A stretch of DNA of 64,000 nucleotides from Lytechinus pictus (Eukaryota): assembly GCF_037042905.1 (NCBI RefSeq), contig NC_087249.1:19096001-19160000 (forward strand), read 5' to 3'. Made by a program: the position numbers and the translations under genes. Below, piece by piece: positions 50,778 to 59,520 of this stretch (within the stretch, counting starts at the first letter, position 1; every line of letters begins with the position of its first letter). The notes under the pieces were generated by a model that saw only the letters and a program-made list of their open reading frames with translations, did no database searches and was not told the origin of the DNA.

Positions 50778-51516
50778 TTATACTCGGCAAACAAAATGAC
50801 AAAACAAAATAATATGCGATTATGTCGTGGCTTTATTCAATAGAGATGAACACTTTTCCGAATCTGGTGTCACAATCACATAAGTATAAAACATGGATAT
50901 GAATACCTCTGATTATAGACTTACATTCATGTATGTCTGGAACCAACCGATAGCCTTTGTTTAGCTCCCCGAAGGGGGGTTAAACCCCCGGCTAGAAGGC
51001 CCCCCTCCCAGAAAATTCAACGTTAAATTTCACGGCTGCTTTCCCACTGGTTCTCTGCTAGCCGGACAGGAATACCAGCACAGCTATTAACTACATGTAT
51101 GAGCTATCGGCAAATCGGTGGATTACAGATGGCATACTTATATCATATAATATACATATATATACCAGCCTTCCCGCATGAGAACTTGGGTGAGGCCAAA
51201 ATTTCACGAAAAATATAAATGTATACAGAATACCAGCCTCCCCGCCTATGAGATCAGGTGAGGCCTAAACTGAAAGTTCGAGCGTGACACCCTTACATTC
51301 AAATTACAATTGCGTTCCTAAAGTACTATGTAAAGTTATAAATAAATCCCCTTCGTCTAGGTACCGAATGAGGACCCGATTCAATATGAAATATTAATCA
51401 ACGTACATGGCATCAAAGTGGAAAATCTAATAACTAGAGGCTAAAATATCATTCACTGCTTTACACACCTTGCAAAAGTGACCATTGTGGATTAAAGAAC
51501 ATATGCCATGCCAATA
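50778..51516. repeat. Direct repeat B2 (outer copy)
   Basis: Matches 52254-52992 at offset 1476; only difference seen is G51505/T52981. Confidence 0.95.
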
Positions 51517-51971
51517 ATATGAGAACTCTATTTAAGTGAATTACCAACATATAACGAACACCCAGTCCCAAAAACGGGTAAGGGCGAAAACCCACCTGAC
51601 CACAGACCAAAATAGATCAGAAGGATAAAATTCCCTTACGGCCCACATTTCTAAATACACGACGATCTTTATATTGTTTTGATGTGCGACCAGGCAAACT
51701 GCCCCCGGATTTGACTTCGTGTTTCGTTATATAAATCAACATTAAATTCATGTAAGTAAAATAATTCAAATGTCCAAATTATTATATAACAATTCTACAT
51801 CCGTTATTCCATTCATAACGAGCTATACACTCCAATAAAACACAAATCAACTCTGAATGATACCTAGAGTATCTTTATTCTCGACCTTCCCCATTGCATG
51901 TGTTTAAACATTCCAACATTGTTTGACCCAAACGTAACATTTACATGGATGGTTGTTGGGGAGGAGGTGGG

Positions 51972-52992
51972 AAAATTACAAGCGAATATTTTGGACGTTC
52001 ATCTCCGTTGAAAGCCAAGACTAAAATGAAGGATTTTTCGCGCCTTCGCCTAGGCGCGCGCGCCAAAATATGGGCGCTCCTTGCGCCCAGTATAAATTAT
52101 TGTCATTGTGCGCATAAACAATACCGTCTGGCGCACCATTGTGACGTATCACCTCGTCAACCGCGCCATTCCAAATTACAAACACCTTCATGACCTGGCT
52201 TTGTTCGCCGACCTATAAATCATTTTAAATCGCCGAGTCGTCTTTAAAATACATTATACTCGGCAAACAAAATGACAAAACAAAATAATATGCGATTATG
52301 TCGTGGCTTTATTCAATAGAGATGAACACTTTTCCGAATCTGGTGTCACAATCACATAAGTATAAAACATGGATATGAATACCTCTGATTATAGACTTAC
52401 ATTCATGTATGTCTGGAACCAACCGATAGCCTTTGTTTAGCTCCCCGAAGGGGGGTTAAACCCCCGGCTAGAAGGCCCCCCTCCCAGAAAATTCAACGTT
52501 AAATTTCACGGCTGCTTTCCCACTGGTTCTCTGCTAGCCGGACAGGAATACCAGCACAGCTATTAACTACATGTATGAGCTATCGGCAAATCGGTGGATT
52601 ACAGATGGCATACTTATATCATATAATATACATATATATACCAGCCTTCCCGCATGAGAACTTGGGTGAGGCCAAAATTTCACGAAAAATATAAATGTAT
52701 ACAGAATACCAGCCTCCCCGCCTATGAGATCAGGTGAGGCCTAAACTGAAAGTTCGAGCGTGACACCCTTACATTCAAATTACAATTGCGTTCCTAAAGT
52801 ACTATGTAAAGTTATAAATAAATCCCCTTCGTCTAGGTACCGAATGAGGACCCGATTCAATATGAAATATTAATCAACGTACATGGCATCAAAGTGGAAA
52901 ATCTAATAACTAGAGGCTAAAATATCATTCACTGCTTTACACACCTTGCAAAAGTGACCATTGTGGATTAAAGAACATATTCCATGCCAATA
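51972..52992. repeat. Internal joined repeat (A2 51972-52258 plus B1 52254-52992)
   Basis: Junction AAATACA-TTATA-CTCGGC equals the join of the two outer ends. Confidence 0.95.
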
Positions 52993-57500: not shown

Positions 57501-59233
57501 ACTCAATTATTTATCAATAATACCGAAAAGTTTAAACTTTTCGCCAATCACTAGTAGACCCTCTATTATTCTCACCATTTTTCAAATACGGTGGCTTAAA
57601 ATTAATCATGGTCCTAAATAGATCTTAGCCTAGACCATAACTAGGCCTTAAAATAAGCTGTTAGTGTTAGCGCCAATATAGACTACAATTTCCTTTTGAT
57701 TTTCCATCGTATATACATATTATCGATACTAGCCACCGGCTTCGAAATTATATATTACAACCGTAGGGCCTAGGCTATATCATACCCGTCCATAGGCCTA
57801 GATCTAGTCATGCAGATGCACTAGGGCCTACGCCTATATATACGCTATACGGTAACCAACGTTATAATTGTTGAACTCATTCTCAAAACCTCCAATCTCC
57901 ATCATTACACACCTGGTTCAGACACCAAAACAAAGTAGTCAAGTAGGACCAGGTCTAGGCCAGGCTAGGCTTGTGCTTAAATTTTGAAGCTAACCCCTCC
58001 CTTTTCCATCATGATCGTAATTAAAACACTTGGTCTTGGACCAAGTTTAAAATTAATTCCAGGCCAAGTCCAAGTTATGTCTAGGATCTATGGCTTGACA
58101 TTTGGTCCTAGGCTAGGCCTATATGTAAATCCCCAATTGCGTTAGCAAGCCAAATCATGGCAAATAGACCCCCCCCCCCCTGTTTGCCTGACTAAATTTA
58201 CTATACTAGGGCCTAAAGTTAGGCATTTGATTTGCCTAGCACATGGGAATGGGATCTTCGCGTGCTAACGTAAAAACCGGGGGGGGGGGGTATTGAAGGG
58301 CCATGAAATTGAAACTATGGAAGAGCTTTGTGTCAGACTCAGAGCGTAACTAATCGACTTCTGACCAATAAGAACCTGATTTTTTTTTTAAATCTCAGAC
58401 TAAGGCCTAGGCAGGCCTACCTGCGCTAGTCTAAACTAAGAAAACTCCACAAGTTACAAATCACCCCGATACTAGTACTACTAGTACTACTTGTACTAGC
58501 ACTGTACTCTGTAGCACTAGCAGGCCTCGATCATTCAACAAGCCTAACTAACATTAACAATAGGCTTAATTAAGTTAGGCCTAGGCCTACTACTACTAGC
58601 CTAGTACTTTAGTAGTACTATTTTTACTAACACTAATCCAGACTGAGACTGAGTCTAGCCTAGATCTATTCCTGCTTCCGTACTCACCGTATAGGCTAGG
58701 TCTTGCAGAGACTGGAACTTGTAAATTGTCTGGTACCGACCCCTTTCCGTCTGCTAATCCAGACCGTTGCCTCGGCTCAGCCACAGGCTTCGCATCATAC
58801 TCGGTCTCGGGAGCTAGTAGTAGTAGGACCTCTGACTCGGGCTCTGACTACCGTAACATTCAATACTCATAATCATGATGAATCCCAGTCGACCGTAAGT
58901 CGTTGAACGGAATTCCATCTCGAGTCAATTTCTCATCGTTGCTGAAACCAAAAAGTTCTAGGACCCAGCCGATCTGCTACTGCTAGTGCTACTGCTAAGT
59001 ACTGCTAGTGTTATACTTAAGTTATAGCGACAACACGTAGCGTAGCTCCTCGTACGGTACCGTCGTATAAAACTCGGTTCAAAGCAGACGGTTAATCGTT
59101 AGGCCAGGCAAGAAATAGAGAATCCTCAAGTAATTCGGACAGCATTTACAGCTGCATTAAGCAAAATTAAGATGATTCCCGATCGATGATGGTTTCAACA
59201 AAAATTCTTGTAGATCTCGTTGTACTTTGTAGA

Positions 59234-59520
59234 AAAATTACAAGCGAATATTTTGGACGTTCATCTCCGTTGAAAGCCAAGACTAAAATGAAGGATTTTT
59301 CGCGCCTTCGCCTAGGCGCGCGCGCCAAAATATGGGCGCTCCTTGCGCCCAGTATAAATTATTGTCATTGTGCGCATAAACAATACCGTCTGGCGCACCA
59401 TTGTGACGTATCACCTCGTCAACCGCGCCATTCCAAATTACAAACACCTTCATGACCTGGCTTTGTTCGCCGACCTATAAATCATTTTAAATCGCCGAGT
59501 CGTCTTTAAAATACATTATA
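59234..59520. repeat. Direct repeat A1 (outer copy), CpG-rich and promoter-like
   Basis: Matches 51972-52258 at offset 7262; contains CGCGCCT-TCGCCT-AGGCGCG hairpin and TGACGT. Confidence 0.95.

What the first reader, a model, noticed from the sequence alone, without database searches (positions are those of the whole stretch)
50778..59520. Young 8.74-kb split-direct-repeat element with a built-in circle junction but no RT or recombinase
Seen: on the minus strand the order is A1 (59234-59520), 6.24 kb internal, B1 (52254-52992), A2 (51972-52258), 455 bp unique spacer, B2 (50778-51516). The repeats are essentially identical while neighbouring repeat families are visibly diverged. The spacer is not found in the internal region, so this is not a simple tandem duplication or deletion derivative. 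Known: A1..B1A2..B2 split direct repeats define PAT, Ngaro and TOC1-type tyrosine-recombinase retrotransposons, where B1A2 equals the circular-intermediate junction. Inference: a recently inserted non-autonomous member whose interior is unrelated, gene-like DNA, mobilised in trans. Alternative: two head-to-tail Crypton- or Helitron-like units sharing ends.
Basis: partly seen in the sequence, partly recalled or inferred. Interest (0 to 1): 0.9.

Follow-up and report, generated by a model that had tools for sequence, protein, structure and literature searches.

The report
Non-coding split-repeat mobile element, young copy
This 8.7-kb stretch is a very recent insertion of a protein-less mobile element family (about 49 full copies) whose split end-repeats are rebuilt from an internal copy, as in PAT/Ngaro/TOC1-type retrotransposons; this is a known kind of element, and the helper that moves it was not found.

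Summary
The repeat layout is real. On the + strand it reads B2 50778-51516, spacer 51517-51971, A2|B1 51972-52992, interior 52993-59233, A1 59234-59518. It is not a one-off or a misassembly. The genome holds 49 A|B junctions and 123 B starts, on many chromosomes, with sharp ends and unrelated flanks. Every junction I could read has the same order.

The interior is not foreign gene-like DNA. It is family-specific, present in all subfamilies at 78-98% identity. It has no open frame over 104 aa and no Pfam, Rfam or DIRS-protein match.

New evidence supports regeneration of the ends. Lineage-private mutations of B sit in both B1 and B2 of the same element (14 events, against 9 single-copy ones). 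The inner ~20 nt of B keep position-specific differences. TTA starts the element, ends it, and occurs once at the junction, and there is no target duplication.

Solo B-spacer-A units and B-interior-A forms also exist.

Verdict: a non-autonomous split-direct-repeat element of the DIRS order, comparable to TOC1 and SIRE. No partner, full-length RNA or sense strand was established. The scan noted the same family on another piece (s1-322065).

The parts
50778..51516 (.). B2, terminal copy of repeat B (739 bp). It starts with the TTA core (50778-50780). Positions 50778 to about 51496 are co-inherited with B1.
   Evidence: 99.3% to B1; sharp left boundary, flank|TTAT(A/T)CTCGG, in 25 copies with unrelated flanks; private variants shared with B1.
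51497..51516 (.). Inner edge of B2 that is not homogenised with B1. It has G at 51505, where B1 has T at 52981.
   Evidence: G in 16 of 17 B2 copies, T in 17 of 18 B1 copies. The old subfamily has an analogous A/C difference at 51511.
51517..51971 (.). Spacer (455 bp), unique within the element and part of every full copy and of the solo 1.5-kb units.
   Evidence: 40 scored hits at 89-100%, out of 71 candidates; no match to the interior.
51972..52258 (.). A2, internal copy of repeat A (GC-rich, 287 bp). It ends in the TTA core shared with B1.
   Evidence: 100% to A1. A1 = A2 in four elements, including all 15 subfamily-specific differences.
52254..52256 (.). TTA core of the internal A|B junction (ACA-TTA-TAC). 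The same TTA begins B2 and ends A1.
   Evidence: all junctions and ends; 49 junctions, 47 of them exact 35-mers.
52254..52992 (.). B1, internal copy of repeat B.
52993..59233 (.). Interior (6241 bp), family-specific and non-coding. The first ~100 bp next to B1 are as conserved as B; the right third evolves fast with many indels.
   Evidence: at least 20 near-full-length copies at 86-98%; longest open frame 104 aa, no Pfam hit; no Rfam hit; no tblastn match to DIRS proteins; conservation profile.
53714..54546 (.). Old internal tandem duplication (about 435 bp x 2, 82% identity), also present in the other subfamilies.
59234..59519 (.). A1, terminal copy of repeat A. The conserved end is ...ATACATTA (59518), followed by T (59519) in about two thirds of copies.
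   Evidence: 100% to A2.; alignments of 22 copies stop at 819, 820 or 821 of 821.

Best explanation
The stretch is one very recent insertion of a non-autonomous, non-coding mobile element family with split direct repeats. This is the terminal architecture of PAT, Ngaro, VIPER and TOC elements of the DIRS order.

Shown: the whole unit B-spacer-A|B-interior-A moves as one piece. The two terminal repeats (B2 and A1) are copies of the internal B1 and A2. The element carries no recognisable protein. It inserts without target duplication, with TTA at both ends and once at the internal junction.

Inferred: an intermediate, most likely an RNA of about 7.7 kb, carries only one complete B and one complete A (roughly spacer-A-B-interior, plus about 20-65 nt of the inner edge of B2). 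The missing outer parts are rebuilt by copying the internal A|B junction. RT and tyrosine recombinase supplied in trans by an unidentified autonomous element then insert the product at TTA, preferentially A-TTA-T.

Solo B-spacer-A and B-interior-A forms are by-products, arising by recombination between the direct repeats or by resolution of a two-junction circle. Which strand is the sense strand is not settled.
For: Dispersed family with an invariant layout. There are 49 A|B junctions and 123 B starts. Every junction whose context could be read has the spacer on the A side and the interior on the B side. The listed extra junctions have a second B start about 1.5 kb on the A side.

Sharp ends with unrelated flanks and no target duplication. 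TTA is at both ends and occurs once at the junction. This matches the rule described for DIRS1-like elements in PMC3266345.

The bases next to the core are biased towards the junction sequence. A precedes the left end in 14 of 25 copies (52% against 31% at control positions in the test). T follows the right end in 14 of 22 BLAST ends plus 4 of 5 loci read directly.

Concerted ends. 14 independent lineage-private variants, including 6-bp and two 4-bp insertions, sit in both B1 and B2 of the same element, against 9 single-copy variants. A1 = A2 in all four elements where both ends were read. The homogenisation boundary is sharp, with inherited position-specific differences in the last ~20 nt of B.

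No coding capacity in any subfamily.

B is far better conserved than the spacer or interior: 0.5% against 2.5-3% in the middle subfamily. This fits a cis-acting role.

At least three subfamilies each have near-identical copies, so amplification is recent.

Active DIRS-order machinery exists in the genome: 78 Phage_integrase hits, and three intact RNaseH-methyltransferase-YR families at 98-99% identity.

There is precedent. TOC1 is called a non-autonomous DIRS retrotransposon (PMC9940879). SIRE equals the A2-B2 part of VIPER (PMC6681497).
Against: No autonomous partner was found. The junction 35-mer and the B-start 31-mer, each with up to 3 mismatches, hit only the family. None of those places lies near a Phage_integrase hit. 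The five YR retroelement families I could read share no DNA with the element, and three of them are ITR/ICR-type rather than split-repeat type.

No full-length transcript was seen. In two stranded RNA runs (about 6% of reads sampled) the interior has depth near 0. The B-spacer-A signal comes from one diverged solo copy that is read through from its flanks.

Concerted B1/B2 variants could also come from gene conversion between repeats 1.5 kb apart.

A closed circle of the element would hold two identical junctions, yet the permuted order was never seen. The classical 'circle cut by a recombinase' step therefore does not fully explain the data.
Confidence: 0.7

Rival explanations
1. A non-autonomous DNA element is moved as double-stranded DNA through a circle by a tyrosine recombinase (Crypton-like or other), with no RNA step. 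The split repeats are a fossil tandem of two units with shared ends, kept alike by gene conversion.
For: The genome has many YR genes, and not all need be retroelements. The TTA core and the junction-like bias of the flanks fit site-specific recombination. Solo B-spacer-A and B-interior-A forms, and a B-sp-A|B-sp-A|B array at C12:3045364-3048558, fit resolution and co-integration of circles. No element-length RNA was seen.
Against: A circle with two identical junctions should integrate in either register, but only one order is found. Fourteen private variants present in both B copies of young elements need very fast gene conversion. Cryptons are not known to need or carry long split direct repeats (PMC3212892 title and abstract, plus my own knowledge).
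Confidence: 0.15
2. Two independent tandem elements (a short B-spacer-A and a long B-interior-A) each transpose on their own, Helitron-like or otherwise, and often land head to tail or are co-mobilised by read-through of the first end.
For: Both single forms exist alone. B-spacer-A examples: L026, C12:12139196-12140676, C2:53650088-53651568, C21:14786238-14787718. B-interior-A examples: C5:23611130-23618438, C2:66316614-66325538. Flanks show A before the left end and T after the right end more often than expected.
Against: The order short-then-long is invariant at every junction examined and never long-then-short. The ends are not 5'-TC / CTRR-3' with a 3' hairpin (sequence). Read-through copying would transmit B1 and B2 separately, which contradicts.
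Confidence: 0.07
3. A rearranged LTR-retrotransposon derivative (LARD-like), in which A|B is the LTR and both outer LTRs are truncated.
For: It is long, non-coding, has direct repeats, and the repeats behave concertedly as LTRs do.
Against: Every copy has exactly the same 'truncation'. There are no TG..CA ends, no 4-6-bp target duplication, and no primer-binding site next to either repeat (sequence). The spacer would have no place in an LTR element.
Confidence: 0.03
4. Assembly artefact at this locus.
For: None beyond the repeats being near-identical.
Against: The same structure occurs at 49 junctions on many contigs. A contig from a DNA run of a related organism spans spacer-A|B at about 97% identity (X9 record 13).
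Confidence: 0.01

Closest known systems
TOC1 of Chlamydomonas reinhardtii (non-autonomous DIRS/PAT-type retrotransposon)
   Same: It is a several-kb element without its own RT or recombinase. It is bounded by split direct repeats, with a complete repeat unit inside. It is called a non-autonomous DIRS retrotransposon in PMC9940879, and TOC elements are placed among split-repeat PAT elements in PMC4157794 and PMC3266345.
   Different: There is no sequence relation. This element sits in a large AT-rich genome that is probably animal. It is longer (8.7 kb), with a 455-bp spacer on one side of the internal junction and 6.2 kb on the other. TOC1 details beyond those papers rest on my memory.
VIPER and its short derivative SIRE (Trypanosoma cruzi)
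   Same: VIPER has A1 ... B1 A2 B2 repeats. SIRE corresponds to the A2-B2 region and is dispersed on its own (PMC6681497). This parallels the solo 1.5-kb B-spacer-A units here.
   Different: VIPER encodes Gag, YR and RT/RH, and the full element here encodes nothing. Whether the solo units move by themselves is open in both cases.
Ngaro and PAT-like autonomous elements (DIRS order)
   Same: They share the split direct repeat layout, with A1 = A2 and B1 = B2 and an internal B1A2 junction (PMC9210276, PMC4157794). They make no target duplication.
   Different: Those elements are defined by RT/RNaseH and YR genes (plus a methyltransferase in PAT), and none is present here. Read on the minus strand the layout is Ngaro-like, with the junction near the 3' end. 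Read on the plus strand it is like the translocated-junction layout that PMC4157794 lists as a character (its figures, which are not held, could not be checked; that this is the Pat1 layout is my memory). The sense strand is unknown.
DIRS1-like elements, including three intact families in this genome (L030-L040)
   Same: The same trinucleotide starts and ends the element and occurs once at the circular-junction sequence, with integration and no duplication (PMC3266345). Here that trinucleotide is TTA.
   Different: DIRS1-like elements have inverted terminal repeats and an internal complementary region. This element has direct split repeats and no inverted repeats, and no DNA similarity to those families.
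LARD / TRIM non-autonomous LTR elements
   Same: They are long non-coding interiors carried between repeats that are regenerated at each cycle and mobilised in trans.
   Different: They have two complete LTRs, TG..CA ends, a primer-binding site and a 4-6-bp target duplication. None of these is found here.

Membership tests
Split-direct-repeat retrotransposons of the DIRS order (PAT / Ngaro / VIPER / TOC) | Order A1 ... B1A2 ... B2, with A1 = A2 and B1 = B2 | tested here: met
   for the window. The same order holds at every junction examined.
Split-direct-repeat retrotransposons of the DIRS order (PAT / Ngaro / VIPER / TOC) | Encodes RT/RNaseH and a tyrosine recombinase (autonomous members) | tested here: not met
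   The longest open frame is 104 aa. There is no Pfam hit in 55 frames of the window or in the 10 longest frames of older copies, and no tblastn match to DIRS proteins of this genome. At best it is a non-autonomous member.
Split-direct-repeat retrotransposons of the DIRS order (PAT / Ngaro / VIPER / TOC) | Terminal repeats rebuilt from the internal junction at each cycle | tested here: met
   14 private variants are present in both B1 and B2, against 9 single-copy ones. A1 = A2 in 4 of 4 elements. The boundary is sharp at 51451-51497. Gene conversion is not excluded.
Split-direct-repeat retrotransposons of the DIRS order (PAT / Ngaro / VIPER / TOC) | No target-site duplication; a short core shared by both ends and the junction | tested here: met
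   TTA is at both ends and occurs once at the junction. Flanks are otherwise unrelated. No empty site could be examined.
Split-direct-repeat retrotransposons of the DIRS order (PAT / Ngaro / VIPER / TOC) | RNA intermediate (element-length transcript) | tested here: inconclusive
   Stranded RNA reads cover only B-spacer-A-B, come from one solo copy, and leave the interior near zero. Only about 6% of two runs was read. Runs of unknown type hold 24-53% of the interior words.
Split-direct-repeat retrotransposons of the DIRS order (PAT / Ngaro / VIPER / TOC) | Autonomous partner with related ends in the same genome | tested here: inconclusive
   No partner was found among 78 YR hits by position, nor among 12 loci by sequence.
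DIRS1-like | Inverted terminal repeats plus an internal complementary region | tested here: not met
   No inverted repeats of 40 nt or more in 48000-62000.
LTR retrotransposon derivatives (LARD/TRIM) | Two complete LTRs with TG..CA ends, a target duplication, and PBS/PPT | tested here: not met
   The ends are TTAT...ATTA, there is no duplication, and the sequence next to the repeats has no TGG primer site.
Helitron / Helentron | 5'-TC, 3'-CTRR with a sub-terminal hairpin, and no terminal repeats | tested here: not met
   The terminal sequences read do not fit on either strand. Long direct repeats are present.
Crypton | A DNA element carrying a YR gene, without long terminal repeats | tested here: not met
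   No YR gene, and long split repeats are present. A non-autonomous derivative cannot be excluded by these tests.

The most novel reading that the evidence does not exclude
The family may be a long-lived, purely non-coding split-repeat lineage whose helper shares no terminal sequence with it. The helper might even be one of the ITR/ICR-type DIRS1-like families that dominate the intact YR retroelements here. Recognition would then rest on the junction structure and the TTA core rather than on shared ends. The 1.5-kb and 7.3-kb single forms would be independent insertions of the two circles produced when a two-junction intermediate is resolved. The strict absence of the permuted order would then show that the newly made junction is chemically distinct from the templated one.
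Probability: 0.12. Interest if true: 0.6.

Novelty: new member of a known kind. Interest (0 to 1): 0.35.

Why it matters
Split-direct-repeat elements are rare and their replication model is largely untested. This family gives a clean natural data set for it. There are about 49 full copies in at least three recently active subfamilies. Private mutations are copied into both B repeats. The regeneration boundary maps to 51451-51497. The core is a fixed TTA, and the permuted order is never seen. These points turn the model into concrete predictions: transcript ends, the empty-site sequence, and non-equivalence of the two junctions. For annotation, it explains an 8.7-kb repeat and its 1.5-kb and 7.3-kb derivatives, which would otherwise be called unknown. 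It does not represent a new kind of element.

Tried and rejected
Coding capacity. All 55 open frames of 45 aa or more in the element were scanned against Pfam at E up to 1, and nothing credible came up. The ten longest frames of older copies also gave nothing. Rfam gave nothing. ORFs of this genome's DIRS elements searched by tblastn against family copies gave nothing below E 0.009.

Partner search. Twelve loci from the Phage_integrase family search showed no DNA similarity to the element. Three of those families are DIRS1-like with inverted ends. L038 and L029 show no split repeats in the part held. The junction 35-mer and the B-start 31-mer, each with up to 3 mismatches, hit only family copies, and none lies near a YR hit.

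Right-end flanks are therefore few (6 read directly).

Empty site. The 400 bp to the left is single copy. The first 122 nt on the right are single copy too, followed by a common ~255-bp repeat. No paralogous empty site is available.

Target resemblance to the junction beyond the bases next to TTA is weak: left p about 0.03, right not significant.

RNA. Read laying gave no starts or ends and no interior coverage. A second run search found no run on record as RNA that holds the interior.

Sense strand. TATA-like and AATAAA-like motifs can be argued for either strand, so I rejected them as evidence.

The organism was not identified, because run labels are coded.
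Full report
OBSERVATION

A self-comparison of the window confirms the layout. On the + strand the order is:
- B2, 50778-51516
- a 455-bp spacer, 51517-51971
- A2, 51972-52258
- B1, 52254-52992
- a 6241-bp interior, 52993-59233
- A1, 59234-59520

A1 and A2 are identical over 287 nt. 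B1 and B2 are 99.3% alike. The spacer has no counterpart in the interior, and there are no inverted repeats. Neighbouring repeats are clearly older: 92% at 48237-48663 and 82% at 53714-54546.

A DISPERSED FAMILY, NOT A LOCAL ACCIDENT

The A|B junction, the spacer and the interior each find dozens of places in the 812-Mb genome. A 35-nt junction pattern finds 49 places, 47 of them exact. They split into 23 with TTATA and 26 with TTATT. A 31-nt B-start pattern finds 123 places.

Flanks outside B2 and A1 are unrelated between copies, and the boundaries are sharp. The left boundary reads flank|TTAT(A/T)CTCGG... and the right reads ...ATACATTA(T)|flank.

Every junction whose context I could read has the spacer on the A side and the interior on the B side. 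The further junctions listed have their second B start about 1.5 kb away on that same side. The permuted order B-interior-A|B-spacer-A was never seen.

A contig from a DNA run of a related organism spans spacer-A|B at about 97% identity (X9 record 13). The junction is therefore neither an assembly artefact nor confined to one species.

THE INTERIOR

It is not foreign or gene-like DNA. All subfamilies carry the same interior: 96-98% in the window's subfamily, about 90% in a second, and 78-88% with many indels in a third.

The longest open frame in the window copy is 104 aa. None of 55 frames of 45 aa or more has a credible Pfam match. The longest frames of older copies have none either. There is no Rfam match and no protein-level similarity to DIRS-type ORFs of the same genome.

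Conservation is highest in B, in A, and in the first ~100 bp of the interior next to B1. It is lowest in the right third of the interior. This is the pattern expected when only cis-acting ends are under selection.

THE ENDS ARE REBUILT FROM THE INTERNAL COPY

I aligned 18 B1 and 17 B2 copies. Variants private to one element are almost always present in both of its B copies. Examples are a 6-bp insertion in L010, 4-bp insertions in L011 and L020, a 1-bp deletion in L006, and a set of substitutions in L012, L015, L016 and L020. That makes 14 independent events, against 9 variants seen in only one copy.

A1 equals A2 in all four elements where both were available, including all 15 differences that separate subfamilies.

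By contrast, the last ~20 nt of B next to the spacer or interior keep inherited, position-specific differences. G at 51505 is found in 16 of 17 B2 copies, and T at the matching place is found in 17 of 18 B1 copies. The third subfamily has A against C at 51511.

So each new copy gets B2 from B1 up to a boundary between 51451 and 51497. This is the same logic that makes the LTRs of a new LTR-retrotransposon copy identical, and it is what the split-repeat model proposes. Copying the composite as plain DNA would transmit B1 and B2 separately.

Frequent gene conversion is the one alternative I cannot exclude.

The window copy has no private difference at all in about 1 kb of paired repeat, so it is very young.

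INSERTION SIGNATURE

TTA begins B, ends A, and occurs once at the junction (ACA-TTA-TAC). It is invariant at both ends, whereas the next base outward is flank-derived. There is no target duplication.

This is the rule reported for DIRS1-like elements: the same trinucleotide at both ends matching the circular junction, and integration by recombination with an identical target triplet (PMC3266345, PMC7192593).

The flank bases touching the core resemble the junction. A precedes the left end in 14 of 25 copies, and T follows the right end in about two thirds of copies. Beyond that, the resemblance is weak.

In L021 the flanks, joined without any TTA, restore a perfect (TTCCTTAA)x3 repeat. This hints that both TTAs may be element-borne, but it is a single case.

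DERIVATIVES

Solo B-spacer-A units of about 1.5 kb exist, some of them 100% identical to the window's spacer. Examples are L026, C12:12139196-12140676, C2:53650088-53651568 and C21:14786238-14787718.

Solo B-interior-A forms exist at C5:23611130-23618438 and C2:66316614-66325538.

One array, B-sp-A|B-sp-A|B, lies at C12:3045364-3048558.

All of these are expected from recombination between the direct repeats, from resolution of a two-junction circle, or from an extra round of template switching. They parallel SIRE, which equals the A2-B2 part of VIPER (PMC6681497). They do not show that two independent elements sit in tandem.

WHAT IS MISSING

No autonomous partner was found. The genome has at least 78 Phage_integrase matches. 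The loci I could read include three intact, multi-copy DIRS1-like families (RNaseH, Dam-like methyltransferase, YR; inverted ends). They also include two further YR loci, L038 (Dam-like methyltransferase plus YR) and L029 (RT plus a broken YR). None shares DNA with this family. No junction or B-start match lies near a YR hit.

RNA gave no support. Stranded reads lie on the + strand over B-spacer-A-B only. They carry the fixed differences of one diverged solo copy that is read through from its own flanks. They leave the interior at about zero. No run on record as RNA holds the interior.

The sense strand is therefore open. Read on the minus strand the layout is Ngaro/VIPER-like. Read on the plus strand it is like the translocated-junction layout that PMC4157794 lists as a character, and B would then act as a U3-like promoter block. 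That paper's figures are not held, so equating this layout with Pat1 rests on my memory.

VERDICT

The 'unrelated, gene-like interior' is not supported. The RNA step and the partner remain inferred.

Non-autonomous DIRS-order elements are already known: TOC1 (PMC9940879) and SIRE (PMC6681497). This is therefore a new member of a known kind. Its value is mainly as a well-populated test case for the replication model.

The scan's first stage flagged the same family on another piece of this genome (s1-322065).

Noticed in passing
window 43610-45561 (+), next to N run 45671-45813: LINE-like retrotransposon ORFs: RVT_1 at E 1e-19 and zf-RVT. Unrelated to the element.
   Followed up: partly
window 48237-48663: A tandem pair of a ~220-bp unit at 92% identity.
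   Followed up: no
window 59643-59920; also G000:C5:23610936-23611132: A ~255-bp dispersed repeat with at least 61 candidate places. Its best relative (90%) directly abuts the A1 end of another family member, whereas here 122 unique bases lie between. This may be coincidence or a shared insertion neighbourhood.
   Followed up: no
L030-L033 and L035; L034 and L036; L037, L039 and L040: Three DIRS1-like families with intact RNaseH - Dam-like methyltransferase - tyrosine recombinase ORFs, inverted internal/terminal repeats, and 98-99% identity between copies. They are probably active.
   Followed up: partly
L029 (G000:C17:18021007-18024576): An RT plus a broken YR, with an array of 13-nt-period small hairpin repeats at 1-800 and a 276-nt, 99% inverted repeat at 2277-3044. 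It may be of the kind noted in s1-322089 (mini-hairpin array between RT and YR), though here the array lies outside the RT-YR segment; not checked.
   Followed up: no
G000:C12:3045364-3048558: Three B starts and two A|B junctions spaced 1582 bp apart. This is a tandem of the short unit in front of a full element.
   Followed up: partly
window 51908-51985 (variant seen in RNA reads): The expressed solo copy lacks 76 nt at the spacer/A border, replaced by TAT. It is transcribed through from both flanks on the + strand in two RNA runs. It probably sits inside a host transcript.
   Followed up: no
L028 1-3300 (G000:C17:22805000-22808300): A 1021-bp-period tandem repeat with 140-aa open frames beside an old family copy.
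   Followed up: no
L027 1825-2277: The A2 of this older copy is interrupted by an insertion of about 450 bp.
   Followed up: no
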